From the IMG/VR virus record IMGVR_UViG_3300050821_009835, positions 62,001 to 126,000 of that record: 64,000 nucleotides of DNA. One strand, given 5' to 3'. Position 1 is the stretch's first letter. Each line of letters begins with the position of its first letter. The notes beneath the pieces are model-generated. The model was not told the origin of the DNA, ran no database searches, and saw only the letters and a program-made list of their open reading frames with translations. The translations under genes were made by a program, and so were the position numbers. Positions 40,488 through 55,286 of this stretch are shown here, piece by piece.

Positions 40488-43400
40488 TCACACGCCTGTC
40501 ACAATACTTGAGGAATCATCAGTTGTAATTCCTCCCAAGAATGGATTAGTGAGCACTGTACGTTGTAGCGCAGAGTTTACTTGAACTACAGCAGATCCAT
40601 TCGACTGCCAATCTGAGTTACATACAATACTAGAACTAATCTCTGCTTCTGCTATCACTATGGAATTAGAAACGCCATTTTCATTAGCCGTTCCGTGTGT
40701 CTGTAACGTCATATTAGACTGTCGTTCGGCTACAAAGAATGTACCAGGTGACGATGCACCTGAAGTTACTATCAATTCTGGGTTAGAAACTGTTAATTCT
40801 GATCCTGTAACGATAAAGCCTGTGGCACTATCGCCTAGACTTATCGAACAGGCTGTCAGAATTATTCCACAGCCCTGCTCAAAACCACCCGCCTGTACAT
40901 TATTCTGCCAAGTGCAATTTACGAATTCAATATCAGAATTTATTCCGTAAACTGCAGGGTTTGTGAATCCCTGAAATTGAAGATTATTAAAGATAACGCG
41001 AGTTGAATCCACAAAAAATGCGGAGGTGGGGCCGTTGCCAAATCCCGTAAAGGCCGAGGCATCAATAACAACTGGTTGAACCGAATTAGGCGCTGTAGAA
41101 ATTACAAAACGCCCTGAACCTTGAACTGTGAAGGCTATGTTAGCCAAAGCATACCAATTGGTTTGAACAATAGTCCCATCCCCCAAGGGAATTTGAGTTA
41201 AAAACGAAGAATTGTTAGGGGTAATTGCGTAGGGAATTCCTGTATAGATCAATTGAATTGAGCACGGGTCACGTAGTACAGGGGGGAAGAGTGCCATGGC
41301 AGCACCAATAGTTTGCAAAGCAGCAGCTTCGGTTAAACCATTGTTGCTATCGTTGCCATTGGCATTATTAACATAGATGATAATCGGGGCAGACGTTGTC
41401 TGCAAATTTTGACCTAATACAGTTTTAGGCGTTGGAGGCTGGATAGCAAAACCAAAATGCGGGATTGCCGTTGCCCAACCACGTTTACCAGCCGTCAAAA
41501 ATTGAATTTCCTTGCGAATATCATGATTCACTGGGACGATAAAGTCATTAGAGTGCAGAGGAGCCAGGAATGTGTCTTCGACGTTGGCTGCTCGCATGGT
41601 ACTGAAATTATCGTCAAAAATCGTTTCTAACGGGATGTTCTGCAGATCACCGTCATTCCAAGAAATCTGAGATGGGAGAGTTGTAATAATCGGCAATTCA
41701 CGATTATACGGGTAGACATCCTCCAAACCCACTACAGGTGCAGCACCTGTTCCATTCGTGGTAATTAAGGCATCGTTTTCATTGTACAAAATTTCGTAAT
41801 TGCGATTAGCAACACCCTCGCCTTGGTATGGAACATACTGAGATTCTACGATCAAAGTGGAATTTGGGTCGAAAGCTGGGAGTAAAGATGCTACAAAGAA
41901 AAACTGCTGAGTCAACAGATTTACGCTAGCTGGACAGACTACAGTAACCACACCGTCATTGAAACTAGCACTGCTGCATTGAAGTGCAGTGAAACCCGTG
42001 ACAGGAGAATCCAAAACCCAAATGAATGCAACAGTTTCGTTCCCGCTAATGCCTCTTAAGATGGCATTGTTGGAAGCCAAAACCACTGTGTTAGTGTTTG
42101 TGTTTATCGGATCATACGCAATAGAAGCTACCGACACTCGGTTGTCCATAGGAAAACCTGCAATGCCAGTAACGTTACCAACTAAGACTGTTTCTTCAAT
42201 TGTAAGAGCACCCTTTACTGGTGCATTGTAGGCTAATTGACAGGTGTTTTCCCCAATAAACGAGAACACTATCGTAGAAGTTGTGATATTGATTCCCGAA
42301 ATCGGGGAAATGCTAACCACCAATTCATCGGGTCCTGTAGCTGATATTGTTAAATTTGTGATATTATAGAAAGTTCCAGTAGTAAGATCCCAACATTGCG
42401 TGCAATACCACCCGCCTACCTGATCACTAATGGTATCACGAGGGATCACAAATGTTGCAATAGTTGAACCCCCGACAGTAAAGAGTGTAGCCTGAGACCC
42501 TGGTATTTGAAGCCAGATGCGCGTCCCAAATACAACATTGCTATATTCTGGGTTGATGGCCAGAAAATTAGAACATACAATACCCGCCGCAGCCGCAGCA
42601 GAACCTGGCAACGGGGGTAGAATAGGCTGAGGGTTTTGAATCTCATAAGCAGAAATACCATATACCGGGAGTGTTTCACCCGCTACCGCATCTATCAATT
42701 CCCCACCATTTACAGCAAACGGCACAACACGTAGGTCAATTCCGGAAGAAGCAGGATATTGAACACTGAGTGTGACGTACAGTGGGTTAGAAGCTGGGTC
42801 AAATGGAGTCCCGGTTAATGATTTGACAAAAGAAACTGTCACGGCCTTAGAACTCAAACCCGAGAAGCCCAGTTGTCCTTGCAATAAATTGACTGGGATG
42901 AAAGTTCCGTTAATACCGTTTGTAAGCGCAGTCACGGCGACGTCTGTAATGGTGGCATTGGATGTCGCTGGTAATGTGATTGTAAAGGAATCCCCCAGGA
43001 TCCACGGACCGGAAGGATTGCCTGTACCCGTGCTTTTTGAGCTGATAGGAAAAGCCTGCGTAGTCATGAAAGTACGCTGATCTGTACTAAAGCCGTTGGA
43101 GAATCCGTCAAATTGACCCACGGTATCAGCATTGGTAACAGCCGTAGGAGAAACAGCCATTGTATAGGAGAGAGTTGATCCCAATGCTTGCGGAGAATTT
43201 CCCGGCGCAACACCACGAGAAATGGCATAGCGTGAAGCACCTGTAATGATATCGGTGAAACCTTCTGCCATAATCTTGCGAAGATCCCAACCTTCCACAT
43301 TGACTGTGCTGCGTGTATCCACGCAATCATCAGGAAAAATTTGATCAGCTAGTTTACCATCGAAACGACCTGAAACACCATATGCTAGTAGACCTGAACT

Positions 43401-44333
43401 TGAATTACCCGGCACAGCACAACCAAAGGGGTTGGTGGATAGGGAGAATGGCCCAGAATTACGCTGAAAGACAACTGCAACAGGCATGGCGTAGCTATAA
43501 CCATCCATAGTTCCTAATGCATTATTGACGTTGCCATCACCTGCACGCCAAAGTCCCGTGTCGCCGTTAATTGCAGCCACATTGGGAGTAGAACCACCCA
43601 TATTAGCATAGGTGTAAATAGAGATTGGTTGAGAATTACTTGTCTGTGGGAAAACTGACAACGGAACATTATAAACAGATGTATCAACCGTATCTGCGTC
43701 CAACCCGAACTGATATGTAGAAAAATTGTAAGCCAGAGAAACAGGCTGAACATTCAAGCGCCATTGAATTTGCGCTCTTTCTGTTGTGAAAATACCTTGA
43801 AATGGATCCAGCGTATCGTCTGGGAGCGACTCAGCTTGACTAGGGTCAGGTGAGACATTCCCGTAAGGAAAGAAGTAGTTTTGCCCTGTGATAGGATCCG
43901 TGTAATAGCCTTGCCCTGTTTCAGGGTCTAACGCTTGATACCAAAGTTCCAAAAATACAACATAGATACTGGCAGGTTCAGCCAATGTACCGGCAGTCCA
44001 ATATTGTGGAGCGGGTAAAATCACACGATTCGTAGTTGGGTCAGCCGACTGAAACCCGGTAATGGTGACAACTTCATTATTGAAAAGAACGTCAAACGAT
44101 GGGATCAAGAATATACTGCTCGAGAATGGCTGAAATTGCATCGGGGAGTAGAGGATCGCCCCAGAAGTTGTTTGATCTGCCAGAAGACGCGTGCGTTTAG
44201 AATCCGCAAGGTCTTGCATAAGATTTAAATCAGCATCAGAAATCTCATTATCATGGAGGGCAACCACTGTTATAAGTGATTTGCCGGTTGGGTCCAATGT
44301 TCGTGAAACGTTAGATGGATAAAGGATTTGCAT
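40488..44333 (-). CDS. Tail/baseplate protein with C-terminal beta-helix (pectin-lyase-like) domain
   Basis: IYVNNANGNDSNNGLTEAAALQTIGAAM followed by beta-helix-like repeats; GGAG upstream of ATG 44333. Confidence 0.6.
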   Translation of the reverse strand: MQILYPSNVSRTLDPTGKSLITVVALHDNEISDADLNLMQDLADSKRTRLLADQTTSGAILYSPMQFQPFSSSIFLIPSFDVLFNNEVVTITGFQSADPTTNRVILPAPQYWTAGTLAEPASIYVVFLELWYQALDPETGQGYYTDPITGQNYFFPYGNVSPDPSQAESLPDDTLDPFQGIFTTERAQIQWRLNVQPVSLAYNFSTYQFGLDADTVDTSVYNVPLSVFPQTSNSQPISIYTYANMGGSTPNVAAINGDTGLWRAGDGNVNNALGTMDGYSYAMPVAVVFQRNSGPFSLSTNPFGCAVPGNSSSGLLAYGVSGRFDGKLADQIFPDDCVDTRSTVNVEGWDLRKIMAEGFTDIITGASRYAISRGVAPGNSPQALGSTLSYTMAVSPTAVTNADTVGQFDGFSNGFSTDQRTFMTTQAFPISSKSTGTGNPSGPWILGDSFTITLPATSNATITDVAVTALTNGINGTFIPVNLLQGQLGFSGLSSKAVTVSFVKSLTGTPFDPASNPLYVTLSVQYPASSGIDLRVVPFAVNGGELIDAVAGETLPVYGISAYEIQNPQPILPPLPGSAAAAAGIVCSNFLAINPEYSNVVFGTRIWLQIPGSQATLFTVGGSTIATFVIPRDTISDQVGGWYCTQCWDLTTGTFYNITNLTISATGPDELVVSISPISGINITTSTIVFSFIGENTCQLAYNAPVKGALTIEETVLVGNVTGIAGFPMDNRVSVASIAYDPINTNTNTVVLASNNAILRGISGNETVAFIWVLDSPVTGFTALQCSSASFNDGVVTVVCPASVNLLTQQFFFVASLLPAFDPNSTLIVESQYVPYQGEGVANRNYEILYNENDALITTNGTGAAPVVGLEDVYPYNRELPIITTLPSQISWNDGDLQNIPLETIFDDNFSTMRAANVEDTFLAPLHSNDFIVPVNHDIRKEIQFLTAGKRGWATAIPHFGFAIQPPTPKTVLGQNLQTTSAPIIIYVNNANGNDSNNGLTEAAALQTIGAAMALFPPVLRDPCSIQLIYTGIPYAITPNNSSFLTQIPLGDGTIVQTNWYALANIAFTVQGSGRFVISTAPNSVQPVVIDASAFTGFGNGPTSAFFVDSTRVIFNNLQFQGFTNPAVYGINSDIEFVNCTWQNNVQAGGFEQGCGIILTACSISLGDSATGFIVTGSELTVSNPELIVTSGASSPGTFFVAERQSNMTLQTHGTANENGVSNSIVIAEAEISSSIVCNSDWQSNGSAVVQVNSALQRTVLTNPFLGGITTDDSSSIVTGV

Positions 44334-44389
44334 TACAATGTAAACTCCGGAAGCGATTTTTCTTTCACTAAGTAGGGAGAAGTCATTCG

Positions 44390-45049
44390 ATGTCCACAAT
44401 TCCTATTCCACAACCCGTGCCTTCCAGTTCCTACGATTATATTCACCAAGATATCGTAGCAACAGCTCTTATTCTTCCCACAGAGAATGACAGTTTCTAT
44501 AATCCAGTAGCAAATCTACACACAGGGTTTGCTTTTGATGGGAGGCTCTATAGAGCAGGAGTTCCTATTGCTTCAGGAAGCCCACCTACATACACTCATG
44601 CAACATGGTGGACTGAGTACACTTCTCTTCCAAACCCTTATCGGGGAGATCAAGCCAATTTCCCGGCAACCGGGTTACTCCTGCTATCACCCGTTTCCCT
44701 TACGATTCTCGATCAGAGCAACCAGGCACTCCCAATGTGGATGCAATTTCTACTATGCGATTCCTTTATGTTTGCTAATGATTTTTCCACTGGGAACTCA
44801 AATTACCCCAATCCTTTATTGAATGGATGGAACCCAAGCGGTGTAACTTACGCTGACGGAATAGTTTCTGTTATCTATACTCCTGACATTGGAGCGTATT
44901 CCGTGGATGCTGAGGCTGCGGGGTCGCCACCATCTTTAGTTGGACCATTCACGATACAACCTGGTGCCGTTGGAAGCGGCCCCAATATGGTTCTTTCCAT
45001 TGATTTTTCTCACGACTGGGCATACTTGGATGTCCCTGTTGCCAGTTAA
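44390..45049 (+). CDS. Hypothetical protein, structural-like composition
   Basis: Lone plus-strand ORF; GGAG SD; P/S/T-rich. Confidence 0.65.
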   Translation: MSTIPIPQPVPSSSYDYIHQDIVATALILPTENDSFYNPVANLHTGFAFDGRLYRAGVPIASGSPPTYTHATWWTEYTSLPNPYRGDQANFPATGLLLLSPVSLTILDQSNQALPMWMQFLLCDSFMFANDFSTGNSNYPNPLLNGWNPSGVTYADGIVSVIYTPDIGAYSVDAEAAGSPPSLVGPFTIQPGAVGSGPNMVLSIDFSHDWAYLDVPVAS

Positions 45050-45118: not shown

Positions 45119-45143
45119 CGGCGAATAGAAACTCTATTCGCCG
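45119..45143. terminator. Perfect 11-bp hairpin between convergent genes
   Basis: CGGCGAATAGA-AAC-TCTATTCGCCG; overlaps the stop codon of 45134..45499. No clear U-tract. Confidence 0.55.
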
Positions 45144-45499
45144 TAATCATCAGTAAAACCTTCTGGGATTGGAGGCATAGGAATCGTTTGATCCTTCATT
45201 GAATGAGTACAATCTCCCTGATAAGCAATCATACCATTGGTCACAATGTAATGACAGGTGAACGGGATTGTGTGGCCAGCAGCATCACGTTCCCACTCTC
45301 CAGTCCAAACCCCATCTTTCCATTGACGTTTAAAACCAGACTGGCGAAAACTAGGAGTAAATGTGGGATTTTCTAGGTCTCCATTGAACTTCCAACTATC
45401 AGGGAGAGGATGCATTTCTCCACAGGCAGGACACCAATGAAAATAACCTTCTGAACAACAGCCTGCTGCGCGTCGAAGTTTGCTACTGACCTGCCCCAC
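45134..45499 (-). CDS. DUF6527-like Cys/His protein
   Basis: HWCPACGEMH...WKFNGDLENPTFTPSF...CHYIVTNGMI...DCTH. Confidence 0.65.
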   Translation of the reverse strand: MGQVSSKLRRAAGCCSEGYFHWCPACGEMHPLPDSWKFNGDLENPTFTPSFRQSGFKRQWKDGVWTGEWERDAAGHTIPFTCHYIVTNGMIAYQGDCTHSMKDQTIPMPPIPEGFTDDYGE

Positions 45500-45923: not shown

Positions 45924-48900
45924 TTAGAAATTAAGGAGATCAGCCTGCTTCAGTGCTTTCAGAATCGCATCAGCATTCGGCGGTAGAGTAACAATTAAAG
46001 TGCCTTCGTCGTTTCCAGTCATATAGACTTTTCCATCTTTCTCTCTAAGGCGTGGGTCAAAGATGTGATAATCGTCAGCAGCATCTATCCCTTTACCTGT
46101 GCTCGGGAAGAACACATACTTGAATGTATCTACAGTAATGAAAGCCCAAGGGGATAAAGTGTCTTTCTGCCCAGTAGAGGGAATACTAATCGTTGCAACC
46201 TGCTTGGCCAAGCTGACCGGGAGATAAACTCTACCCGACTTAGACATGAAATAGAGAAACTCCTGGTCCGGATGCTCTTTCAAATAAGTACCCACCTGCT
46301 GAGCCTCTTGTTCTGCTCCCTTGCTATACCGTTTTTGAGCTTTTTCTTTTCCCACAGCAGGTAGTATCTCCATACCCGCCTGTTCAATTTCAGACAATGG
46401 CACAACTATACCGCCCGAGCTTTGATATTGGAGAGTATAGCTACCTGCAGGAAGTGTCACTACTTGAGCAGAGTAAGTTCGGCGAGTGATGCTAGACCCT
46501 GTTTGTAGAAGAACTGGAACAGGCTGAGTAATCTTTATCTTGGTGCGAGGAAGAGCGGCGTCTGGCACCTGATTTAATCTTTTTCCAATTTCATCTGTGT
46601 ATGAGACAAACGTGCTCTTCTCTTTCGAGATAGTTGGTAGAGGGAGTCCCGCATATTGTTCAGCCGTTATCTGTTCAATGTTTGGAGACCACATTAAACC
46701 GGAACCAGCCTTGTATTTGTATGGTTTCAGATCTACCCCCAATGCAGAAGCCTGTTTTTCAAATTCAGCCATCCAAGAAGGATTAGGTAACCCATAGAGT
46801 TGTAAACCCGCTAGCATACTAGATCTACGGATTTGTTGCTCATCCACAGCTGCTTTGTAGAACGAGAATGAAGCTGTTTTTCCGACCTCCTTGAACAGTT
46901 TCGGGTCCCAGAACACTTTGTGCTGATCTTTGTATTTTCCAGTGTTCACGCATTCCGTCTTACCTGGGCCTTCCGTATGGGATACAACTGTTTCTGCAAC
47001 GGGAGTACCATCAAAAGTAAAAACGAGCTTCTCCCCTGGCAAGCAGACGATGGGATGACGGAACGCCCAGAATTCTAGATTACCTTCAGGCGGTTCTTCC
47101 CAAAAATGTTCACGAGACGCCTTGGGAACTTCGATCTTGAAAGAGCGTTTCGTCATCCGCCCTGCCTTTTTAGAAGACTCCTTCGCGAGTTCCGCAGGAT
47201 CTAGATCCAACTTAAAAATCTCCACATGATCCGGCGTGAAGACTACACCCGGGATCTTCTTCCAGCTGTAACCGCCCCCGGTTTCATAGACGTTATGCGG
47301 AATGTCCACAGCATAAACTTCTTTACCGAACTCATTGTCCATGTAGACTATGACATAAGCATGATCATCACCCGGTTGTCCGCCTTCGGTCACGCTGCAC
47401 TCAATCGGGACCCGATCATAGACGACCCCGGTTATGGCCTGAGCGATCTCGTCACAGATTCCACCTGTTCCGTTCTCAGGATCCTCACCTGCTTCATTCT
47501 GGTCCCAAGCATCATAGATCTTCTGCGCTTCCGCTGCCATCTCCAGTGTAGCTTCTTGCAAGTAGTGAAGAAGCACAGTCCGGTTACGGGTGGCGGTATG
47601 CTCAAGGCATCCTCCGGACAGGCAAGCGACGCAGACCTTCGCAGCGATCCGAGAAGATGCGGCAGTCTTATGAGACAGAAACTTCTGCCACTCCACGCCA
47701 AATTCCTGAAGTGGGAGATTATCCGGCAGCTCTGTTAGCCAAAGATACAGAGCAACCGGGTCGACGTCCTTGGGCTTGATCACGTCATAGTGGTTGTCCA
47801 TGACACGAATGAGGCCGTTCTTGAGAGAAAGTCCGACGACGTTACCGAAAGTCACGCGCTGAAGTTCTCTATCAATGTCCGCGTTTGCAGTTTTGGAAGC
47901 ACTAAATTTTACAAATGCCTTATCCTGAATCTGCCTACCGTAAGCAATATCGTCCAGTATAGCACCGTCGTAACCTTGTTTCTGGAGTACCCGAACCAAC
48001 TGACTCACTTCCGTGCCGTGAAGATTGCTATCGAAAATCGAGGCAGGCGTATTCATCTCATTGTTAATGCCCAATTTAGAAGCTTCCGCTACGATGACAT
48101 CCCAAGGTGCAGGATTACTAATGGATATTTCTCCCTCGTTTAATTGCCCGCCCGTTCCGAAACGATCATTGTACATCTCAACATAGGACTCTGCCATTTC
48201 CTTGTTAGGAGTCCAATAAGTCACGGCCCCGCCTGGTTTGCTGTTGCCTCCGTTATACATCTTTGAAGCAATTTTGGACGCCAAGGTTAAGCTGTAATCC
48301 TTCTGCCCATGCGTTGCGCTGGGTGTCTCTTCAACTGGATGAGTCTTTTTCAAATCCTCCCAAATCTTTCCAGATTCTCCAATGCGATAGTTGGCTGGAC
48401 TCTCTACTTTCTTGACACCGTGTTCTTTGAGAAAGTCAAACCCCATCCTATAGAGGTAGGAGCCATATCCCTGCCGACGAAAATCGTATTCAACCCAAAC
48501 ATTATGGACAGCTGCGACAGTCCCTGGAGAATACACAATAAATTGAATCTTGCCAATGTAGACGCCCTGGAGATTTTTAGCCTCGAATGTATGGATTATT
48601 GCCCCAGACTTGACTCCAGCCTCTTTCTCAGTATGCTCAATCTGAATTTCTGAAGGATTTGCCGGCGCGGTTGCAGTTTTTCTGGTTCCAATGTATGCTT
48701 GGATGGTTTTATCACCGCGCATCTTAGCCGCATCCCGACGATGATAGCCGTCAACGACGTATTTATTGCTGCCAATAACGATTGGGGGTAGCGCGGTCTT
48801 GCGTTGCGAGTATCCCCAAGCCACTGGAGGATGTTTACCCTGCCCCCAATGGATGCTGGGATCATTAATATCTATGGTCTGAAGAACGTACTCATCTGCT

Positions 48901-51374
48901 TCAGCTATCCATTCTGGATCTTCAAATGGTTTTCGTTCCCACCCCTTTTTATGGAGAGAGTTAACATACTCGAGCATTCCATCGGGGGTTAATAAACTTG
49001 GATATCGTTCATCGTTCTCCTTAGCTCGTTTGTTTTCTTTGCGCCCCCAAATTTCGATCGGCAGATTCCTTCCGATTATCAAAGCCGCTATAGCACGATG
49101 TTGTCCATTCAAAATAACCAAACGACCATCCTTTAACCGAGAAACAGGCACAGGCGGAGGGATGCTTCCCGCTTTCCACATATCCGCGTATTCTTGAGCT
49201 TTTTGTTTACTTCCCTCTGGGTTGTTTAATTCTTCTTGCGTATAAAGTTGACTTGGGTCCATTGAAGTCGTTTCTAGAAGTGTCAAACGACCGGCCTCAA
49301 ACTCCAACAAATCGTTGAAAGATTCATCTGTCGGCTCCATGTATTTTAAAGAATCATGACCCGAATGGAAAGCTGCTTGTTTATGACTTCCAAACGGAAC
49401 CCCATTACGCGCTCCATTGGCTCGAGAGAGCACGAGAGAGCCGCAGGAGAAGGAGATACCCTGCGCCCAATCTGACCCCTCGTACTTGTGAGCAACCTCT
49501 GGCTTCACGTAAGCGATAGTTACATGGGGTTTATAGGGAAAATCATCTTTACGATTTCCTATAGCAGAATCGACCAATTCATGGAGGACATGTAAATCTG
49601 CAGCATGAGCTTCGGCAACAATAGGAACTCCTCCGGCTTCAGATGCTGTAAAAGCATGCATTTTACCCAATACGACAGAAAAATTGTGCTGCTCACCTAC
49701 AGCCCAGGCCAGTTTTTCTAGATTCTCTTCCACACCAAACTTTACCGTAATGTGAGGATCATCTTCAATCCCCTTCACATCTAGATCCTCGGCAGGTATA
49801 CGGCGGGCTACAGCGAAGACATCGTCTCGTGCTGGACCAGATAATCCGATAATCACAAGAGGCTTCTTATCCTTGCCCAAATACTTAGCCATTCTGAGGT
49901 CGTAGCCCATCCTGCTGTTGCTGAAAGCAATTCTGACATCAGGGTATTTTTCGCGCAGACGCTCAAGAACTGGACGTATCTTAGTCTCCCCTTCAGAAGA
50001 GAAGGTGGAGATTTTCAATTCATGACGACCAGAATCTTGTACAAACTTTACAGCAGCTTCGAGTAACTGGCGAGCATACCCTCGTCCTTCATAACCTTTA
50101 CGAGTCGTGATATGCATTAACCAAAACTGATCTGGATTGTTTGGGTTAGGGTAGAGTTCACAATCTGCTACAATCTTGCCATCGTCAAGGATATCAAAAT
50201 GGGGTTCCTGACGAAGATCAGAATGACGAAGATACATTGTCTCTTCCATCAAACGGTTGTCTTCTTGCTGGAATTTGCGAATCTGTTCACCCTTCATGAA
50301 AACAGGTGGAGAGGCTGCGGTTTTAGCTGCGGTTACAGTCTTTAATTTATCGGGAGGATTTTGCCAAGCACCCCCATTTTCTTTCCACCCGATAATCGAG
50401 ACTGTAGTACCCTCTATTAAACGAATTTCTGCTTCTTCAGGGGCAGCTAGATTGCAATAAGCTGTTGCCAACCAGTCAACCTGACCTGGGACAACTGTTC
50501 CTTTAAAAACTAAAGCTGCACCCCCCATAGCATTGTAAGGCTGGGCTGCATTTTCTTCCCAAGACCAAAACTTACCGAAATTATCTGGATTTATCTGATT
50601 TATGGAAGCAGAAATAGCTCGATAAACGGGTAACCGATTTGTCCTGGCGAGCTCCTTAAGATGCTCTTCAACAGGGGCATAGGAAAGTTCTAGAAACTGC
50701 TCTGCTGCAACCTCGAGTTGCTCTTCGGGTAAGTTTTGATTGATATTATTTTCCCGAAGATACTGATGAAATTCTCCAGAAGGAATTGTATCCCAAAAAC
50801 CGCCGTAATTTAAGACTTGATCAAAGCTGGGAACACCCGAGGCTGCTTTAGATTCAATCCCAAACTCCTCGGGCATCATCAATTCAAGAGGGATAAATGA
50901 TTGAGTCCCTTTCTGCTTCTCAGGCTGATTGACATATCCGTTAGTCTCTTCTACGAAAGTTTCGTCTCGTCCGGGAGTCTGTTTGTGGGTTGCGGTCTTC
51001 CTAGATTCCCGAATAGGACTTCCCATTTCCGTTTGATAGATGTTAATCCGTTTTATCAATTCTTTAGGAATTTTCTTACCGGGGTAAACCCAAGTTACAT
51101 TATCCTCTAAAAGGACTATTCCCTCCTCCAACTTAGAAGGGTCTACAACAACGATAGCAATTTCATCAACCTCAGCATATCTGGATCCCCAATGAGCAGC
51201 ATAATCTAAATCCTCAGCGAAGTAGATCCCTCCGTTTGGGACATAAAGACCGTCGCGCTTGATTTTTTCCACATTTTCCACCGGGGTGCCATGGAAAATT
51301 TCTGGGGGGAAATACTTAGCGACGACGCCTTTTGGCGCGACACTTAGCCCCGGCTTTTGCAACAAAGGATTCAT
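45924..51374 (-). CDS. Giant polyvalent protein (about 1816 aa): ART x3, GNAT x2, 2H phosphoesterase, ParB-like x2, papain-like, unknown domains
   Basis: FHGT; YRA...FWSW...EEAE; GYEGRGYA; HITV/HVTI; NGQHR; DGYHR; FRRQGYG; YNG...YWT...GYDG; GICD...DHAY...VDI. Start uncertain (51374 or 51392) and overlaps the JAB gene end. Confidence 0.85.
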   Translation of the reverse strand: MNPLLQKPGLSVAPKGVVAKYFPPEIFHGTPVENVEKIKRDGLYVPNGGIYFAEDLDYAAHWGSRYAEVDEIAIVVVDPSKLEEGIVLLEDNVTWVYPGKKIPKELIKRINIYQTEMGSPIRESRKTATHKQTPGRDETFVEETNGYVNQPEKQKGTQSFIPLELMMPEEFGIESKAASGVPSFDQVLNYGGFWDTIPSGEFHQYLRENNINQNLPEEQLEVAAEQFLELSYAPVEEHLKELARTNRLPVYRAISASINQINPDNFGKFWSWEENAAQPYNAMGGAALVFKGTVVPGQVDWLATAYCNLAAPEEAEIRLIEGTTVSIIGWKENGGAWQNPPDKLKTVTAAKTAASPPVFMKGEQIRKFQQEDNRLMEETMYLRHSDLRQEPHFDILDDGKIVADCELYPNPNNPDQFWLMHITTRKGYEGRGYARQLLEAAVKFVQDSGRHELKISTFSSEGETKIRPVLERLREKYPDVRIAFSNSRMGYDLRMAKYLGKDKKPLVIIGLSGPARDDVFAVARRIPAEDLDVKGIEDDPHITVKFGVEENLEKLAWAVGEQHNFSVVLGKMHAFTASEAGGVPIVAEAHAADLHVLHELVDSAIGNRKDDFPYKPHVTIAYVKPEVAHKYEGSDWAQGISFSCGSLVLSRANGARNGVPFGSHKQAAFHSGHDSLKYMEPTDESFNDLLEFEAGRLTLLETTSMDPSQLYTQEELNNPEGSKQKAQEYADMWKAGSIPPPVPVSRLKDGRLVILNGQHRAIAALIIGRNLPIEIWGRKENKRAKENDERYPSLLTPDGMLEYVNSLHKKGWERKPFEDPEWIAEADEYVLQTIDINDPSIHWGQGKHPPVAWGYSQRKTALPPIVIGSNKYVVDGYHRRDAAKMRGDKTIQAYIGTRKTATAPANPSEIQIEHTEKEAGVKSGAIIHTFEAKNLQGVYIGKIQFIVYSPGTVAAVHNVWVEYDFRRQGYGSYLYRMGFDFLKEHGVKKVESPANYRIGESGKIWEDLKKTHPVEETPSATHGQKDYSLTLASKIASKMYNGGNSKPGGAVTYWTPNKEMAESYVEMYNDRFGTGGQLNEGEISISNPAPWDVIVAEASKLGINNEMNTPASIFDSNLHGTEVSQLVRVLQKQGYDGAILDDIAYGRQIQDKAFVKFSASKTANADIDRELQRVTFGNVVGLSLKNGLIRVMDNHYDVIKPKDVDPVALYLWLTELPDNLPLQEFGVEWQKFLSHKTAASSRIAAKVCVACLSGGCLEHTATRNRTVLLHYLQEATLEMAAEAQKIYDAWDQNEAGEDPENGTGGICDEIAQAITGVVYDRVPIECSVTEGGQPGDDHAYVIVYMDNEFGKEVYAVDIPHNVYETGGGYSWKKIPGVVFTPDHVEIFKLDLDPAELAKESSKKAGRMTKRSFKIEVPKASREHFWEEPPEGNLEFWAFRHPIVCLPGEKLVFTFDGTPVAETVVSHTEGPGKTECVNTGKYKDQHKVFWDPKLFKEVGKTASFSFYKAAVDEQQIRRSSMLAGLQLYGLPNPSWMAEFEKQASALGVDLKPYKYKAGSGLMWSPNIEQITAEQYAGLPLPTISKEKSTFVSYTDEIGKRLNQVPDAALPRTKIKITQPVPVLLQTGSSITRRTYSAQVVTLPAGSYTLQYQSSGGIVVPLSEIEQAGMEILPAVGKEKAQKRYSKGAEQEAQQVGTYLKEHPDQEFLYFMSKSGRVYLPVSLAKQVATISIPSTGQKDTLSPWAFITVDTFKYVFFPSTGKGIDAADDYHIFDPRLREKDGKVYMTGNDEGTLIVTLPPNADAILKALKQADLLNF

Positions 51375-51861
51375 AGTTCTTCTTTCGTTCAACTGCTAAT
51401 GGACGAAGGCACGGCCAATAGCTCACAACCGTCTTCCGCCTACTACCATCTTTTGGAATTTGAATAGCACAAACAGCCAAAATCGATTCTTGCGTGTTCA
51501 AACTGTCCCGGATATCGTGTTCGCTTAAAACCGCGTCGTCGCAATCGGGGTGAGTATGAATCGTCCCCAAGAACTCGAGTTTGATTCTTCGACCAGATAC
51601 AGAGTCATAGATCTCCGTGTCCTTGGCATCATCCTCATGCCGATCTAGTTCTAGGTCTTCATCAATGCAGACTACTTTACGAGTGTTGGTTTCCTTTTTA
51701 TTGATGTCGCATTTAATGAAGGCACAAATGTACACTGTGTCTCCACGGACATAACCCCATAAAGCCGAAATGGTTTCTTTGGGGGCATAACGCAACGCTC
51801 GCCGACGAAAGCGCCCTTCTTCCCTGCCGTCAACAACGACTTTCAAGAAAGGTGCGATCAT
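51316..51861 (-). CDS. JAB/MPN+ metalloprotease
   Basis: Catalytic E (KETIS) and HxHx7Sx2D motif (IHTHPDCDDAVLSEHD); SD AAGGA. Confidence 0.85.
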   Translation of the reverse strand: MIAPFLKVVVDGREEGRFRRRALRYAPKETISALWGYVRGDTVYICAFIKCDINKKETNTRKVVCIDEDLELDRHEDDAKDTEIYDSVSGRRIKLEFLGTIHTHPDCDDAVLSEHDIRDSLNTQESILAVCAIQIPKDGSRRKTVVSYWPCLRPLAVERKKNYESFVAKAGAKCRAKRRRR

Positions 51862-51870
51862 CTTAGTTCC

Positions 51871-53448
51871 TTAGTTTAAAATACTATTCACCATGGTCGT
51901 TACTCGACCTTCTGTTTCGCCCCGGCGCTCACATAACTTCTGCAAGCGAGTTTTCTTTGCTTTCTTGACTTTAATCTCAAAATCCTCGCTCGCTGTAAGA
52001 TGATACCGCGCTGCAGCAAGCCTACGTTTTAAATGAGCCACTACCCCTGTTTGTAACGGGCAGCCCGTGCGACGCTCAATCTCTCCTTGCAGTTCGTCAA
52101 TGCTTGATTCGCCCGCACCAACCAATGCTCCCAGCATTTCCAGAATCTGAACTTCAGCCTCAGACAACTGGCCCATGCTCGGCTTATAGCCCAAGTCATG
52201 GTTCACCTCTTGCAAAGCATGCATCAGAATGGAAGCAGCCTGAATTTCTACAACCGTGCCCTCATACCAAACAGTATAGTGGAGTGCTCGATAAATCTGA
52301 CCGTCTTCTGGATCAGCATCGCGTGGAAATTCCTTTACGGGTCTGGCCTGTTCAAAATTTGATTCAATGATCGCTCGAACCTTTTCTTGATCATGAGGGA
52401 AATACAATGCTACACGTACCCCAGCCAGGTCCTTAATGTCTTGCTGAATTGCTGCCAAATCCTCATACTGATTTTTGTTGTTACGATTCATTAGCTTATC
52501 ACGCAAACTTCTCGTACGTTTGGCACGGCTGGTGACCAGCGCCTTAATCTTGTCTGCTTGGAATATATCCTCAAGAAACTCTTGCACCTCCAAAGCCACG
52601 TGTTCGTAAAACTCGAAATCGTAACTATCGAGGAACCGCATAATGAGCTTGGGAACACTGGCAGAAGTCTTCAAAACAGTTCCTATGGAATCTGATCCTC
52701 CATCATGCTTTAACGCTTGTCTTATTCGAGAATCAAAATTAATCGGGTATTCGGTGAGTTCGTATAATTTCTGTACCATAGCGGTTAAAACTCCCGCATG
52801 TTGTAGATCTTTTGCTACTTCATATCGACCCAATCGCGTTCTTCCAGAAATAATTGTATAGGGTAACTGTCCGGCTGTTCTCCCTTCCAACAGTGCAGTC
52901 AATACTCCCGAGGTCTTGTATTCTTCTTCTGAAATGATGTAATTCGAAAAATGCAATTTACTGATAAGTTCAGGATTATAGACACCCTTCAGATGCTGAT
53001 CTGCACCCGTCTTATTCACCTGATTTTGATTCTCTGCGACAGCGTCAAAGAGATACTTGAGAGGAATCTCGTCAATGTCCCCAAGATTCTTGTCTCCCCA
53101 CATATCGGTGTAGCATTTCTCTGCGCTCAAGAGATCCGGGAAGCCAAGGAACACTTTGTATTCGTCAAATTCACCTTTATCGTCAAGTTGTTCAACAGCA
53201 TAGGCATATTCAGCCGATTCATCTTCTCCGACATACACATCCACTGGTTCTTGATCCCCGGATCCAGAAGTGGCGGGAATATATCCATAATCTGCCAACA
53301 TTTCTTTCTCCCAATGAGTTCCATCGGGTAAATCTCCCTCTCGAATTCCTCCCTTTGGGGTTTCGATGATTATCGGCAGCCCCTGGTAAGAAGACGGTCG
53401 ATTAACGTCTCCGCTTGCTCTCTTAAGGAATGTAGCAGTCAAACTCAT
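51871..53448 (-). CDS. Polyvalent protein: pyrophosphatase-like domain + RelA/SpoT nucleotidyltransferase (small alarmone synthetase-like)
   Basis: IETPKG...DYGYI...D.EPVDVYV (PPase fold); RAKRTRSLRDKL, DLAGVRV, YRALHY, VEIQ, EVNHDLGYK (RelA/SpoT). Confidence 0.85.
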   Translation of the reverse strand: MSLTATFLKRASGDVNRPSSYQGLPIIIETPKGGIREGDLPDGTHWEKEMLADYGYIPATSGSGDQEPVDVYVGEDESAEYAYAVEQLDDKGEFDEYKVFLGFPDLLSAEKCYTDMWGDKNLGDIDEIPLKYLFDAVAENQNQVNKTGADQHLKGVYNPELISKLHFSNYIISEEEYKTSGVLTALLEGRTAGQLPYTIISGRTRLGRYEVAKDLQHAGVLTAMVQKLYELTEYPINFDSRIRQALKHDGGSDSIGTVLKTSASVPKLIMRFLDSYDFEFYEHVALEVQEFLEDIFQADKIKALVTSRAKRTRSLRDKLMNRNNKNQYEDLAAIQQDIKDLAGVRVALYFPHDQEKVRAIIESNFEQARPVKEFPRDADPEDGQIYRALHYTVWYEGTVVEIQAASILMHALQEVNHDLGYKPSMGQLSEAEVQILEMLGALVGAGESSIDELQGEIERRTGCPLQTGVVAHLKRRLAAARYHLTASEDFEIKVKKAKKTRLQKLCERRGETEGRVTTMVNSILN

Positions 53449-53633: not shown

Positions 53634-55286
53634 ATGAAATGCGGAGGGAACGCTATTTTGAGCAAAAAAGGTACGTTATCCCCAGAAATTCTTCAACCCA
53701 TTCTTGACGCCTATAACGCAAACGGCGGGAACATATCAGCAACGGCCAGAATGTGTGGTGTCAGTCGTAAAAAAGTTTATACAGCCCTCCGTCAAACGGG
53801 TGGTATCAAACGAAGTGGGCATCGTCCGACATTAGCTGCAGGAACTGTCTCTGGCGTCACTCTCGTTGTTAATCCCCTCCCGTCCAAAGACCAGATTAAG
53901 CGATACATCCTTACATCAGCCCAGAATAACACTTATGTCCATGATGATGTTTGGAAAAATATCCTTGCACTTGCAGAATACTACAACGCCGAATTGTACG
54001 TAGGCAGTTTTTCCTACGACAAAAATGCATATGGGCCTCTGGCTGTAAAAGCAGATACCTACGATGCGGGCGATCAAAAAGAACTATGGTTTGATCCGAA
54101 AATCGAAAAGCATCGCAAGGATAAACGCATTGAACTAGGCAATGGATTATGGTGGTGCGGCGAGATGAATGTTCTTCCAACTGCTAATGACCCGCTGGAA
54201 GGCTTGGAAGTCTACTCCGGGCGCAAGTCAGCAATCTTCCCCCATGCTAAAATGGCGATGCGTTCCATTGCTACAATGAAGGGTGAAGGCACCAAATTCA
54301 ATTACACCACGGGAACCGTCACCAAGAAAAATTATATTCAGAAGAAAGCCGGGCTCAAAGCCGAATTCCACCATGTTTACGGCGCTTTACTAGTCGAGGT
54401 TAACAGCAACGGCAATTGGTGGGTGCGACAATTGGAGGCCGATGGGAACGCTCGCATCCAAGATTTAGCTGTACTCGCGAATAATGGCCAGGTCACCGAG
54501 GGACATCGTATTGAAGCAATAACTTGGGGGGATATCCATGCTACGATCATTGAACCTTCAGTGATGAAACAAAGCATGGATATGCTCCGCATTCTAAGAC
54601 CAAAATACCAGTTCCTTCATGACATCATGGAAGGTGCCTCAGTTAATCACCATAATGAGAAAGATCCCTTTGAACGGCACAAAGCATACATTCGTGGGTT
54701 GGATAACATAACAACTGAAGTAACACGCACTCGAGCAGTTCTTGAAGAGTATGTTAAGAACGGCGGCCCCGATATTCAGACTCTCGTCGTCGATTCTAAT
54801 CACGATAATTGGTTCTATCGCTGGTTAAAGTCCAATGATCCCCGTAAGGGAAATCCCTGTAATGCTATCCTTTACCACGCAGGCAGTTTAGCTGCGCTGT
54901 ATGCCATTGAAAAAGAAGATAAAAAATTCAACATGACAGAATGGCTGTTTCGACGTTTCGGCGTGCCAAAACAAATCCGCTTTCTTGCTACAGATGAATC
55001 CTTCACTATCTGCAACAAGAAGATTGAGTGTGGTATGCACGGGCACCTTGGGCCTAATGGCGCAAGAGGAACTCCTCAAAATCTGTCTAAAGTGGGTCGG
55101 AAATCTATAACTGCACACACCCACAGTGCAGGTATATACGATGGAAATTATGTAGCCGGAACTAGCACTCAACTCGACATGGGCTATAATCATGGCCCTT
55201 CTAACTGGTCACACTCAGACGTACTGACTTACCCATCTGGCAAACGCTGCATTGTTACGAAATACGCTGGTAATTGGAGAGCGTAA
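53634..55286 (+). CDS. HTH + calcineurin-like metallophosphoesterase, T5 A1-like nuclease candidate
   Basis: HTH GGNISATARMCGVSRKKVY; ILTSAQNN; WGDIH, HD, SNHD, MHGH, AHTHS. The A1 likeness is from recollection. Confidence 0.65.
   Translation: MKCGGNAILSKKGTLSPEILQPILDAYNANGGNISATARMCGVSRKKVYTALRQTGGIKRSGHRPTLAAGTVSGVTLVVNPLPSKDQIKRYILTSAQNNTYVHDDVWKNILALAEYYNAELYVGSFSYDKNAYGPLAVKADTYDAGDQKELWFDPKIEKHRKDKRIELGNGLWWCGEMNVLPTANDPLEGLEVYSGRKSAIFPHAKMAMRSIATMKGEGTKFNYTTGTVTKKNYIQKKAGLKAEFHHVYGALLVEVNSNGNWWVRQLEADGNARIQDLAVLANNGQVTEGHRIEAITWGDIHATIIEPSVMKQSMDMLRILRPKYQFLHDIMEGASVNHHNEKDPFERHKAYIRGLDNITTEVTRTRAVLEEYVKNGGPDIQTLVVDSNHDNWFYRWLKSNDPRKGNPCNAILYHAGSLAALYAIEKEDKKFNMTEWLFRRFGVPKQIRFLATDESFTICNKKIECGMHGHLGPNGARGTPQNLSKVGRKSITAHTHSAGIYDGNYVAGTSTQLDMGYNHGPSNWSHSDVLTYPSGKRCIVTKYAGNWRA

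What the first reader, a model, noticed from the sequence alone, without database searches (positions are those of the whole stretch)
49400..49865. Acb1-like 2H phosphoesterase embedded in the polyprotein
Seen: two HxT motifs (HITV at 49754, HVTI at 49526) with EDDPHITVKFG and YKPHVTIAY. Known: T4 Acb1 is a 2H phosphoesterase that destroys CBASS cyclic oligonucleotides, and 2'-5' RNA ligase-like enzymes share the fold. Inference: if virion-delivered, it would neutralise nucleotide second messengers before phage transcription starts.
Basis: partly seen in the sequence, partly recalled or inferred. Interest (0 to 1): 0.62.

Follow-up and report, generated by a model that had tools for sequence, protein, structure and literature searches.

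The report
2H phosphoesterase in phage polyvalent protein
A giant multi-enzyme protein of an uncultured jumbo phage does contain an intact 2H phosphoesterase module, but this kind of module was described in 2017, it is no closer to the anti-CBASS enzyme Acb1 than to ordinary RNA cyclic phosphodiesterases, and its substrate is untested.

Summary
Window 49389-49865 (- strand) encodes a 2H phosphoesterase domain with both HxT motifs, at residues 510-668 of one 1,822-aa open frame (45924-51392). The window is part of a 264.9-kb IMG/VR jumbo-phage record.

The fold is secure: PF13563 scores 33.9 bits, the AlphaFold2 model has pLDDT 93.7, and every PDB match with Z of 6.7 or more is a 2H protein.

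"Acb1-like" is only partly right. The Acb1 Pfam score is 22 bits against a cut-off of 27. The best structural matches are ThpR/LigT cyclic phosphodiesterases (Z 15-16) against Acb1 at 13.0-13.6. Profile comparison with T4 Acb1 and with E. coli ThpR is a tie. The Acb1 lid and three of its five base-contact residues have no conserved counterpart.

The domain belongs to a large phage clade (2,145 cluster representatives). Most members sit inside giant "polyvalent" proteins or are fused to portal, MuF or InPase domains. Iyer et al. (2017, 2022) described this class and already proposed injected degradation of immune nucleotides.

Virion delivery and substrate remain inferences. RNA-end healing is the main rival; a separate Pnkp-Rnl1 cassette in the same phage weakens it. 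Verdict: a new member of a known kind, of modest interest.

The parts
49389..49865 (-). 2H phosphoesterase domain (P0001 residues 510-668)
   Evidence: PF13563 33.9 bits on the excised piece. AlphaFold2 model pLDDT 93.7, pTM 0.87. VIA-align Z 13-16 to solved 2H proteins, then a drop to Z 3.5 for non-2H chains. Limits agree with the solo homologue P0009.
49746..49754 (-). First catalytic motif His547-Ile-Thr549 (DPHITVKF)
   Evidence: Read directly. In alignment A2 the His is present in 73/73 family members and the Thr in 71/73.
49518..49526 (-). Second catalytic motif His623-Val-Thr625 (YKPHVTIAY)
   Evidence: Read directly. His 73/73, Thr 72/73, flanking Tyr620 70/73 and Tyr628 71/73.
45924..51392 (-). 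Polyvalent protein gene (1,822 codons from TTG 51392; 1,816 from ATG 51374)
   Evidence: Single open frame. Modules recur in shuffled order in other 2H-bearing giant proteins. The database copy P0002 is 1,816 aa.
50007..50261 (-). GNAT acetyltransferase module 1 (residues 378-462)
   Evidence: PF00583 E 1.4e-15.
49047..49322 (-). ParB-like module (residues 691-782), directly after the 2H domain
   Evidence: phrog_1033 E 8.4e-12. The relative P0005 has a faint ParB_N hit after its own GNAT and 2H modules.
48402..48575 (-). GNAT module 2 (about residues 940-997)
   Evidence: PF00583 E 1.9e-7 on piece 860-1010.
47892..48275 (-). Module 1040-1167, probably an ART of the polyvalent type
   Evidence: phmmer E 7.9e-5 to the region of P0026 that Pfam calls ART-PolyVal (E 9e-21). 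No direct Pfam hit in this protein.
51000..51392 (-). N-terminal module 1-131, weakly ART-like
   Evidence: PARP E 0.021 and Tpt1/KptA E 0.041, both below cut-off. Language-model neighbours are viral proteins of 100-136 aa, one cluster carrying PARP. The single-sequence fold failed.
51871..53448 (-). Upstream gene: InPase + RelA/SpoT nucleotidyltransferase (525 aa)
   Evidence: PF18823 E 4.6e-29 and PF04607 E 1e-13. The same neighbour is found in four related contigs.
51316..51861 (-). Prok-JAB metallopeptidase gene; overlaps the polyprotein ATG by 59 nt
   Evidence: PF14464 27.4 bits. An H-x-H...S-x-x-D motif is present. The gene is conserved in L019, L020 and L021.
45134..45499 (-). BubE/DUF6527-type Ser-His peptidase gene downstream
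   Evidence: PF20137 30.2 bits and phrog_3362 E 5.6e-20. Conserved downstream of the polyprotein in three relatives.

Best explanation
Window 49389-49865 (-) encodes a catalytically intact 2H (double His-x-Thr) phosphoesterase module. It is one of about nine modules of a 1,816/1,822-aa 'polyvalent' effector protein of an uncultured jumbo phage.

Identity (confidence about 0.95). It is a member of the phage clade of 2H domains described by Iyer et al. 2017. These domains live mostly inside giant multi-domain proteins, or fused to portal, MuF or InPase domains.

Chemistry (inferred from the superfamily). Catalysis is metal-independent. The two histidines act as acid and base. Either a ribose 2'-OH attacks the neighbouring phosphodiester to give a 2',3'-cyclic phosphate, or such a cyclic phosphate is hydrolysed.

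Role (inferred; this is what the confidence figure refers to). The polyprotein is made with the tail/virion genes. It is probably packaged, and possibly cut at recurrent K-T-A-[A/S/T] linkers. The 2H module then acts in the newly infected cell on a nucleotide-type host alarm signal (cyclic oligonucleotide, or a 2'-5'/3'-5' linked oligonucleotide), probably together with the conserved neighbouring InPase phosphohydrolase. This is functionally Acb1-like without membership of the Acb1 family.
For: Fold and active site
- PF13563 33.9 bits.
- Model pLDDT 93.7.
- All 21 PDB representatives with Z of 6.7 or more are 2H proteins; the next scores Z 3.5.
- The domain carries all 4 invariant and 14 near-invariant family residues.

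Clade
- phmmer finds 2,145 cluster representatives at E<=1e-3.
- Of the best 150, 59 are longer than 1,500 aa and only 17 are 250 aa or shorter.

Virion and effector link
- Homologues include Portal_Mu-2H-MuF (P0008), 2H-MuF (P0068), and proteins with ART-PolyVal, GNAT, ParB and SprT-like domains.
- The gene is co-oriented with and adjacent to giant tail/baseplate genes.
- InPase-bearing PHROGs are annotated as minor head or virion proteins.

Nucleotide theme
- An InPase+RelA/SpoT gene lies immediately upstream in the window and in four related contigs.
- InPase and 2H are fused in two-domain proteins P0081 and P0113, and are neighbours in the split form L017.

Kinship with Acb1
- Acb1 7t26 is the top hit of the family profile against PDB sequences (E 5.9e-5).
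- Y-x-P-H-x-T-[LI]-[AS]-Y is shared with Acb1, whereas ThpR has Arg at the last position.
- The invariant Phe581 aligns with the base-stacking Trp74 of Acb1.
- Clade members P0010, P0011, P0081, P0113 and P0013 pass the Acb1 cut-off. E. coli ThpR does not hit the Acb1 model at all.

No link to RNA ligases
- None lies next to the 2H gene in seven contexts examined.
- The phage has its own Pnkp-Rnl1 healing and sealing cassette about 70 kb away.

Prior prediction: PMC5512222 section 20; PMC9503650 section 3.4.5.
Against: - No biochemical test exists for this clade; I found none in the literature.
- The nearest solved structures are RNA/nucleotide 2',3'-cyclic phosphodiesterases, not Acb1.
- The Acb1 score is below its cut-off.
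- The Acb1 lid (residues 145-152), Glu141, Trp147 and Tyr12 have no conserved counterpart. The chain runs on into a ParB-like module instead of ending.
- This phage record shows no MuF domain and no portal fusion. Packaging of this particular protein is therefore inferred from class and gene position only.
- The record is about 78% complete and the host is unknown, so it is unknown whether the host has CBASS, type III CRISPR or similar systems.
- The phage encodes three RNA ligases, so an RNA-repair role is not excluded.
Confidence: 0.42

Rival explanations
1. RNA end-healing enzyme of the ThpR/LigT type. The module opens 2',3'-cyclic phosphate ends left on tRNA or mRNA by host metal-independent anticodon or toxin nucleases, so that the phage RNA ligases can reseal them.
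For: The best structural matches are drCPDase, TT0787, P. horikoshii LigT and E. coli ThpR (Z 15.3-16.2, 148-159 residues aligned). The size and the C-terminal beta-hairpin ending in P-[LF]-G resemble ThpR rather than Acb1. LigT_PEase scores 25.4 bits against a 23.3 cut-off. The phage record encodes three RNA ligases. PMC7824862 section 3.4.9 proposes this role for jumbo-phage 2H enzymes.
Against: A complete Pnkp (kinase + HAD phosphatase) lies beside an Rnl1-type ligase at G000:C1 about 36.8-39.5 kb. That cassette already provides healing and sealing, and it is about 70 kb from the 2H module. No ligase or kinase is adjacent to the 2H gene in any of seven contexts. Iyer et al. report that this 2H clade never associates with RNA ligases. 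The Arg that follows motif 2 in ThpR is a near-invariant Tyr here. The module's partners are effector-type modules (ART, GNAT, ParB, InPase).
Confidence: 0.25
2. Offensive RNase of the Usb1 type. The injected module trims or cleaves host RNAs, leaving 2',3'-cyclic phosphate ends, as part of host shut-off.
For: Usb1 structures score Z 14.4-14.7 over 160-162 residues. Iyer et al. prefer this or messenger degradation, because the 2H-MuF and 2H-portal fusions parallel the fusions of PBECR RNase domains. The neighbouring RelA/SpoT module suggests interference with host translation or transcription.
Against: Sequence identity to Usb1 is 10-13%, and no Usb1-specific feature was tested. The two-domain InPase-2H fusions point to a small phosphorylated substrate rather than bulk RNA. 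There is no RNA-binding module next to the domain.
Confidence: 0.15
3. Processing of ADP-ribose 1'',2''-cyclic phosphate, or another NAD-derived product, made by the ART-like modules of the same polyprotein. This would follow the KptA/Tpt1 plus cyclic phosphodiesterase logic.
For: The N-terminal module gives weak PARP and Tpt1/KptA hits (E 0.02-0.04). Module 1040-1167 is related to an ART-PolyVal region. The plant Appr>p cyclic phosphodiesterase 1fsi is the second-best PDB sequence hit of the family profile (E 1.2e-4). The 2H-KptA link is established biochemistry (PMC9503650 section 3.4.5).
Against: The KptA score of 13.8 bits is far below the 26-bit cut-off, and the record holds no other KptA. 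The N-terminal fold could not be modelled (pLDDT 35.6). The CPDase Pfam model matches only 3 of 73 clade members. ART and 2H modules are not consistently adjacent among homologues.
Confidence: 0.08
4. A true orthologue of Acb1: same family, same lid-closing mechanism, and the same substrate range of adenosine-containing cyclic di- and trinucleotides.
For: Acb1 is the top PDB sequence hit of the family profile. hhalign probability to T4 Acb1 is 90%. The second motif is shared, and the Trp74-equivalent aromatic residue is invariant.
Against: The Pfam Acb1 score is 22.3 against a cut-off of 27. The alignment is limited to Acb1 residues 42-119. The Tyr12-equivalent column is Ser in 45 of 73 sequences. 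The Phe107 equivalent is shifted by one position. No Glu141 or Trp147 lid is present, and nothing is conserved after P-[LF]-G. The structure ranks below ThpR, Usb1 and YjcG.
Confidence: 0.07

Closest known systems
2H phosphoesterase domains of phage polyvalent proteins (Iyer, Burroughs, Anand, de Souza, Aravind 2017, PMC5512222; restated in PMC9503650)
   Same: The domain sits inside a phage protein of more than 1,000 aa, together with GNAT, ParB-like and ART-like modules. InPase and RelA/SpoT are encoded next door. Homologues are fused to portal and MuF. There is no adjacent RNA ligase. The proposed roles are the same (RNase, or degradation of immune nucleotides).
   Different: Nothing essential differs. 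This is a new combination and order of modules in a metagenomic jumbo phage. Here the cassette is flanked by JAB and BubE-type peptidase genes, and the modules are separated by a K-T-A-[AST] motif. My term searches of PMC5512222 and PMC7824862 did not turn up either feature ('JAB' had no occurrence in PMC7824862), but I did not read either paper in full.
Acb1 (T4 gp57B, Erwinia phage FBB1; Pfam PF23474; PDB 7T26/7T27; Hobbs et al. 2022, PMC9117128)
   Same: 2H fold (Z 13.0-13.6, 135 of 137-140 residues aligned, rmsd 2.9-3.1). HxT/HxT tetrad. Y-x-P-H-x-T-[LI]-[AS]-Y around the second His. An invariant aromatic residue (Phe581) at the Trp74 position. Phage origin.
   Different: Below the Pfam cut-off (22.3 against 27 bits). 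About 20 residues longer, with a ThpR-like helix insert and C-terminal hairpin. No counterpart of Tyr12, Glu141, Trp147 or the 145-152 lid. Embedded in a polyprotein rather than a free protein of about 150 aa.
ThpR/LigT RNA 2',3'-cyclic phosphodiesterases (E. coli ThpR 5LDM/4QAK, T. thermophilus TT0787 1IUH, D. radiodurans CPDase 5H7E)
   Same: Best structural matches (Z 15.3-16.2). Similar length. The C-terminal hairpin is shared. LigT_PEase is marginally above its cut-off. hhalign probability is 88.5% over 109 columns.
   Different: Only 15-20% identity. Arg after motif 2 is replaced by Tyr. The setting is a viral effector context rather than a cellular housekeeping gene. There is no link to ligases.
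2H phosphodiesterases of eukaryotic viruses (rotavirus VP3 C-terminal domain, MHV ns2, torovirus polyprotein 1a, penguinpox cGAMP PDE)
   Same: 2H modules that destroy host immune nucleotides (2'-5' oligoadenylate, 2'3'-cGAMP). Some are embedded in viral polyproteins (PMC9503650 section 3.4.5). From my own knowledge, not from a tool result, rotavirus VP3 is a virion-packaged multi-domain enzyme. Z 10.1-13.1.
   Different: Distant in sequence (12-17% identity). Different hosts and signals. The resemblance is one of strategy, not of subfamily.

Membership tests
2H phosphoesterase superfamily | Two H-x-T/S motifs, each preceded and followed by hydrophobic residues, on the two lobes of an internally duplicated fold | tested here: met
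   His547-x-Thr549 and His623-x-Thr625. P-H-[IVL]-T-[IVL] occurs twice against 0.0056 expected. Both His are 73/73 in the family alignment.
2H phosphoesterase superfamily | The 2H alpha+beta fold | tested here: met
   Model pLDDT 93.7. All 21 top representatives in an exhaustive PDB comparison are 2H proteins (Z 6.7-16.1); the next is Z 3.5.
Acb1 (PF23474) | Score at or above Pfam's gathering cut-off (27 bits) | tested here: not met
   22.3 bits on the excised domain, 17.3 on the whole protein, 21.8 in the six-frame search. T4 Acb1 scores 202 bits as a positive control.
Acb1 (PF23474) | HxT/HxT catalytic tetrad (His44, Thr46, His113, Thr115 in T4 numbering) | tested here: met
   Aligned by hhalign to His547, Thr549, His623 and Thr625.
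Acb1 (PF23474) | Aromatic residues stacking on the bases (Tyr12, Trp74, Phe107, Trp147) and the adenine contact Glu141 | tested here: not met
   Only Trp74 has a conserved counterpart (Phe581, 73/73). The Phe107 column is Asp, with a Phe one position later (43/73). The Tyr12-equivalent column is Ser (45/73). Glu141 and Trp147 lie outside the alignable region, and nothing is conserved there. The test is sequence-based; the model was not superposed residue by residue.
Acb1 (PF23474) | Free C-terminal lid (residues 145-152) that closes over the ligand | tested here: not met
   The chain continues into a ParB-like module. The segment after P-F-G has pLDDT of about 59 and no conservation. A lid could arise only if the protein were cut here, which was not tested.
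Acb1 (PF23474) | Cleavage of 3'3'-cGAMP and other adenosine-containing cyclic di- and trinucleotides; protection from CBASS | not testable with these tools
   Needs enzyme assays and phage challenge.
ThpR/LigT (PF02834 LigT_PEase) | Score at or above the cut-off (23.3 bits) | tested here: inconclusive
   24.8-25.4 bits on the excised domain but 19.7 on the whole protein. No single stretch passes in two of the three scans. E. coli ThpR scores 79 bits.
ThpR/LigT (PF02834 LigT_PEase) | H-x-T-h-h-R: basic residue five positions after the second His | tested here: not met
   Tyr628 in 71/73 sequences, as in Acb1. ThpR has Arg130.
ThpR/LigT (PF02834 LigT_PEase) | Functional or genomic coupling to RNA ligase, kinase or KptA in phages | tested here: not met
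   None is adjacent in seven contexts. The phage's Pnkp-Rnl1 pair lies about 70 kb away.
Phage-type polyvalent proteins (Iyer et al. 2017) | Many unrelated enzymatic or effector domains in one polypeptide, shuffled among relatives | tested here: met
   The protein carries two GNAT modules, 2H, a ParB-like module, ART-like modules and several unknown modules. Each module recurs at different positions in other 2H-bearing giant proteins.
Phage-type polyvalent proteins (Iyer et al. 2017) | Phage-specific domain set (2H, InPase, RelA/SpoT, ParB, ART) and linkage to virion genes | tested here: met
   InPase+RelA/SpoT lies next door. Tail and baseplate genes are downstream on the same strand. Homologues carry Portal_Mu, MuF and ART-PolyVal.
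Phage-type polyvalent proteins (Iyer et al. 2017) | Packaging in the virion and injection with the DNA | not testable with these tools
   No MuF or portal fusion is found in this record. Virion proteomics is needed.

The most novel reading that the evidence does not exclude
The 2H module and the InPase phosphohydrolase may form a two-enzyme unit that is delivered with the virion. They are fused in P0081 and P0113, are neighbours in the window and in four related contigs, and are separate adjacent genes in L017. In this reading the 2H module is released from the polyprotein at the lineage-specific K-T-A-[AST] linkers by the flanking JAB or BubE-type peptidases. The unit would then dismantle a phosphorylated host immune nucleotide in two steps, before any phage gene is expressed. 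Candidate targets are a 5'-triphosphorylated or 3'-pyrophosphorylated oligonucleotide, or a cyclic oligonucleotide. That would be the first pre-packaged anti-signalling enzyme system in a phage.
Probability: 0.15. Interest if true: 0.65.

Novelty: new member of a known kind. Interest (0 to 1): 0.3.

Why it matters
All characterised phage enzymes that destroy immune nucleotides (Acb1, Apyc1) are free proteins made after infection. If a 2H module carried in the virion did the same job, the phage would be protected from the first second of infection. Thousands of polyvalent proteins in metagenomes would then become candidates for the same role. That idea is already in print, and this window adds one more example rather than a test. 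Its practical value is as a well-delimited, high-confidence construct (residues 505-680, or the GNAT-2H-ParB unit 357-905) for the missing biochemical assay. It also records a conserved InPase-JAB-polyprotein-BubE cassette.

Tried and rejected
- phmmer of the single domain against PDB sequences gave nothing at E<=10. Only the family profile reached PDB entries.
- Megablast of 9 kb around the gene against 50,697 phage records found no match. tblastn of the domain found only 12 weak hits (26-34% identity).
- The word-index protein search found only 7 long and 3 short relatives. This left the subfamily open, so I used the one exhaustive representative search.
- The single-sequence fold of the N-terminal module 1-135 failed (pLDDT 35.6). 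I did not use it for any search.
- Searches of the phage record for RtcB, ART-PolyVal and MuF were negative. The KptA search gave only a sub-threshold 13.8 bits at the polyprotein's own N-terminus. The record is about 78% complete, so absence is weak evidence.
- Literature searches found no experimental work on this clade: BCSR5 phosphodiesterase, Acb1 with 'polyvalent', Acb1 with 'MuF'.
- I considered and rejected reading the sub-threshold Acb1 hit as membership. The same model also gives sub-threshold hits in 4 of 14 control cellular genomes.
- I considered and rejected treating the Z-score order as proof of ThpR function. Acb1 is shorter and almost fully aligned, and a shared fold does not give the substrate.
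- Not used: read laying, the look-up of sequencing runs and complex prediction. No binding or expression claim is made.

Full report
**Where the window lies.** The window is bases 62001-126000 of a single 264,912-bp IMG/VR virus record. The record is linear and CheckV rates it about 78% complete. It is an uncultured jumbo phage. GC content is an even 44-48% and the window holds no tRNA gene. No phage record in the collection is similar at the DNA level.

**Observation.**
- The finding lies inside one open frame, 45924-51392 on the minus strand. It has 1,822 codons from a TTG, or 1,816 from the ATG at 51374, which is the start of the database copy P0002.
- Bare H-x-T occurs six times in the protein against 2.3 expected. 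The full form P-H-[IVL]-T-[IVL] occurs only at these two places, against 0.0056 expected.

**What it is.**
- Pfam places the excised piece in 2_5_RNA_ligase2 (33.9 bits, cut-off 27). LigT_PEase is marginal (25.4 against 23.3) and Acb1 is below its cut-off (22.3 against 27).
- An exhaustive phmmer search of 1.84 billion cluster representatives found 2,145 relatives at E<=1e-3 and 402 at E<=1e-10. I ran it because the word-index searches returned only ten relatives and left the subfamily open.
- Of the best 150 relatives, 59 are longer than 1,500 aa (up to 6,158 aa), 45 are 601-1,500 aa, and only 17 are 250 aa or shorter. The domain sits at very different positions in them.
- In an alignment of 73 domain copies (A2), His547, His623, Gly541 and Phe581 are invariant. 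Thr549, Thr625, Tyr620, Pro622, Ala627, Tyr628 and Tyr637 are nearly so. The window's copy carries all of them, so I predict it is active.
- With this alignment AlphaFold2 gives a confident model (pLDDT 93.7, pTM 0.87).
- In a comparison with 48,161 PDB representatives that does not depend on Foldseek, the 21 best chains are all 2H proteins (Z 6.7-16.1). The next chain scores 3.5.

**Acb1 or ThpR?** Four tests were applied.
1. Pfam: the domain is below the Acb1 cut-off. The Acb1 model also gives sub-threshold hits in four ordinary cellular genomes, so a 22-bit hit is not specific.
2. Structure:
   - The best matches are D. radiodurans CPDase (Z 16.2), T. thermophilus TT0787 (16.1), E. coli LigT/ThpR (15.7) and P. 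horikoshii LigT (15.6).
   - Next come human Usb1 (14.7), B. subtilis YjcG (14.3) and Acb1 from phage FBB1 (13.6 apo, 13.0 with product; 135 residues aligned, rmsd 2.9-3.1).
   - Below those are MHV ns2 (13.1), the Burkholderia phage BCSR5 enzyme (11.8) and the penguinpox cGAMP phosphodiesterase (11.0).
   - Foldseek gives the same order.
   - Among predicted viral structures, the best matches are a fragment of a giant uncultured-phage protein and '2'-5' RNA ligase' proteins. Entries named Acb1 appear at ranks 28 and 48.
3. Profile against sequence: hhalign of A2 with T4 Acb1 gives probability 90.4%, E 1.4e-6, over 77 columns that cover only Acb1 residues 42-119. With E. coli ThpR it gives 88.5%, E 2.7e-6, over 109 columns. 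This is a tie. The family profile against all PDB sequences also gives a near tie: Acb1 25.8 bits, plant Appr>p CPDase 24.8, BCSR5 Acb1 24.2, drCPDase 23.3.
4. Acb1-specific residues, as defined in PMC9117128:
   - The catalytic tetrad is present.
   - Trp74 corresponds to the invariant Phe581.
   - The Phe107 column is Asp, with Phe one position later.
   - The Tyr12 column is mostly Ser.
   - Glu141, Trp147 and the 145-152 lid have no counterpart. After the conserved P-[LF]-G nothing is conserved, and the chain runs into a ParB-like module.

Two points favour some kinship with Acb1. The motif Y-x-P-H-x-T-[LI]-[AS]-Y is shared with Acb1, whereas ThpR has Arg at the last position. In addition, several clade members pass the Acb1 cut-off (P0010 34.3 bits, P0011 37.9, P0081 33.6, P0113 33.5, P0013 27.5), whereas E. 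coli ThpR does not hit that model at all.

My reading is that this is a distinct phage clade of the 2H superfamily. Its catalytic core resembles Acb1 and its C-terminal half resembles ThpR. The window's copy is not a member of the Acb1 family as defined.

**The host protein.** P0001 carries these modules:
- a weakly ART-like N-terminal module (1-131);
- a module of unknown function (132-356) that recurs in 21 other 2H-bearing giants;
- GNAT (378-462);
- the 2H domain (510-668);
- a ParB-like module (691-782);
- a second GNAT (about 940-997);
- a module (1040-1167) related to an ART-PolyVal region of P0026;
- three further modules of unknown function.

Each module recurs in other 2H-bearing proteins in a different order. 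Homologues include Portal_Mu-2H-MuF (P0008), 2H-MuF (P0068), SprT-like-2H (P0014) and 2H with ART-PolyVal (P0026). This is the 'polyvalent protein' class of Iyer et al. 2017. [quoted passage not shown] They also propose that the 2H domains act either as RNases or by degrading nucleotides of host defence systems. The 2022 survey repeats that 2H domains fused to MuF or portal are probably packaged and injected to counter oligonucleotide signalling.

**Context.**
- On the minus strand the gene order is: InPase+RelA/SpoT (51871-53448), Prok-JAB peptidase (51316-51861), the polyprotein, a 138-aa ORF, and a BubE/DUF6527 peptidase (45134-45499).
- After one plus-strand ORF come genes of 1,303 aa (no family hit), 1,967 aa (Ig-like He_PIG repeats) and 1,567 aa (baseplate J and tail protein).
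- The order InPase+RelA/SpoT, then JAB, then 2H polyprotein, then a small ORF, then BubE recurs in related contigs L019 and L020. It recurs partly in L021 and in the contig of P0004.
- In L017 the same theme appears as separate genes: InPase, SprT-like peptidase, solo 2H.
- InPase and 2H are fused in the two-domain proteins P0081 and P0113.
- A 69%-identical solo copy (P0009) lies among very small ORFs in short metagenomic contigs.
- This phage record has no MuF domain. Packaging of this protein is therefore inferred from its class, from its neighbours and from fused homologues. It is not shown.

**RNA repair as a rival.** The record encodes two Rnl2-type ligases and one Rnl1-type ligase. The Rnl1-type gene (G000:C1 about 38376-39491) lies beside a full Pnkp with kinase and HAD phosphatase domains (about 36754-37761). 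That cassette supplies healing and sealing by itself, and it lies about 70 kb from the 2H module. No ligase lies near the 2H gene in any of the seven contexts examined. This weakens the end-healing role but does not exclude it. That role is what PMC7824862 suggests for jumbo-phage 2H enzymes in general.

**Mechanism and weights.**
- Shown: the fold, the intact active-site residues, membership of the polyvalent-protein clade, and the conserved InPase and peptidase neighbourhood.
- Inferred: metal-independent two-histidine catalysis on a phosphodiester next to a 2'-OH, or on a 2',3'-cyclic phosphate; packaging and injection; the substrate.
- I put degradation of a host nucleotide signal at about 0.42, ThpR-like end healing at 0.25, a Usb1-like RNase at 0.15, Appr>p or NAD-derived substrates at 0.08, and true Acb1 orthology at 0.07.

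**Verdict.**
- It is a new member of a known kind, of modest interest.
- The most useful by-products are a clean construct definition for an assay and the passing observations: the K-T-A-[AST] linker motif, the conserved JAB and BubE flanks, and the InPase-2H coupling.

Noticed in passing
window 45924-51392 (-); P0001 residues 132, 351, 357, 905, 1167, 1242, 1505: A K-T-[AV]-[STAN] motif (mostly KTAA, KTAS or KTAT) recurs 7 times between the modules of the polyprotein, against 0.23 expected. There is only one loose match in the other roughly 17,400 aa of window ORFs. Among 110 long 2H-bearing homologues it occurs 80 times against 16.6 expected (permuted controls 7-22), concentrated in the nearest relatives. 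In P0014 and P0015 it directly follows the 2H domain; in this protein that place reads SHKQAAF. These are probably proteolytic processing sites or a linker signature.
   Followed up: partly
window 51316-51861 (-) and 45134-45499 (-); L019, L020, L021: The polyprotein is flanked by a Prok-JAB metallopeptidase gene and a BubE/DUF6527 gene. BubE is the Ser-His peptidase of bacterial Bub ubiquitin-like conjugation operons (bioRxiv 10.1101/2024.11.21.623953). The JAB gene overlaps the polyprotein's ATG by exactly 59 nt in the window, in L019 and in L020. These genes could process the polyprotein, or could strip host ubiquitin-like tags from phage tail proteins.
   Followed up: partly
window 51871-53448 (-): A 525-aa protein joins an InPase domain (E 4.6e-29) to a RelA/SpoT nucleotidyltransferase domain (E 1e-13). 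It is conserved immediately upstream of the cassette in four related contigs. InPase is also fused directly to the 2H domain in P0081 and P0113.
   Followed up: partly
outside the window: G000:C1 about 36754-37761 and 38376-39491; also C1:208331-208783 and 233043-233567: The phage has a T4-like RNA repair set: Pnkp (AAA_33 kinase + HAD_PNKP phosphatase) beside an Rnl1-type ligase, plus two Rnl2-type ligases elsewhere. A peptide deformylase gene lies just upstream of Pnkp.
   Followed up: partly
window 27550-28191 (-): A GIY-YIG type homing endonuclease gene (phrog_314, E 1.3e-27) is wedged between large tail-region genes.
   Followed up: no
window 53634-55286 (+): A 550-aa protein with an N-terminal helix-turn-helix matches phrog_1745 ('DNA transfer protein') almost end to end (E 2.5e-167). 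A divergently placed gene of 539-558 aa, whose family I did not check, lies near the cassette in related contigs L019 and L020.
   Followed up: no
window 40488-44399 (-), 34578-40481 (-), 28254-32957 (-): Three giant genes lie downstream of the cassette. One is 1,303 aa with no family hit at all. One is 1,967 aa with four He_PIG Ig-like repeats. One is 1,567 aa with baseplate J/wedge and tail-protein matches.
   Followed up: no
P0001 residues 132-356 (window 50325-50999, -): This module has no Pfam family but is the most widely shared one apart from 2H. phmmer finds it in 21 of the 157 other 2H-bearing proteins, at varied positions.
   Followed up: no
L002 1045-1560 (+): A stand-alone 171-aa copy of the 2H domain (P0009) is 69% identical to the window's. 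It lies in a run of ORFs of 48-78 aa in short metagenomic contigs (listed in 62 blocks of the collection). The same module therefore exists both free and embedded.
   Followed up: partly
L016 6001-6519 (+): The solo 2H protein P0011 passes the Acb1 cut-off. It lies between a large terminase gene and a T4-type portal gene that is interrupted by two inteins.
   Followed up: no
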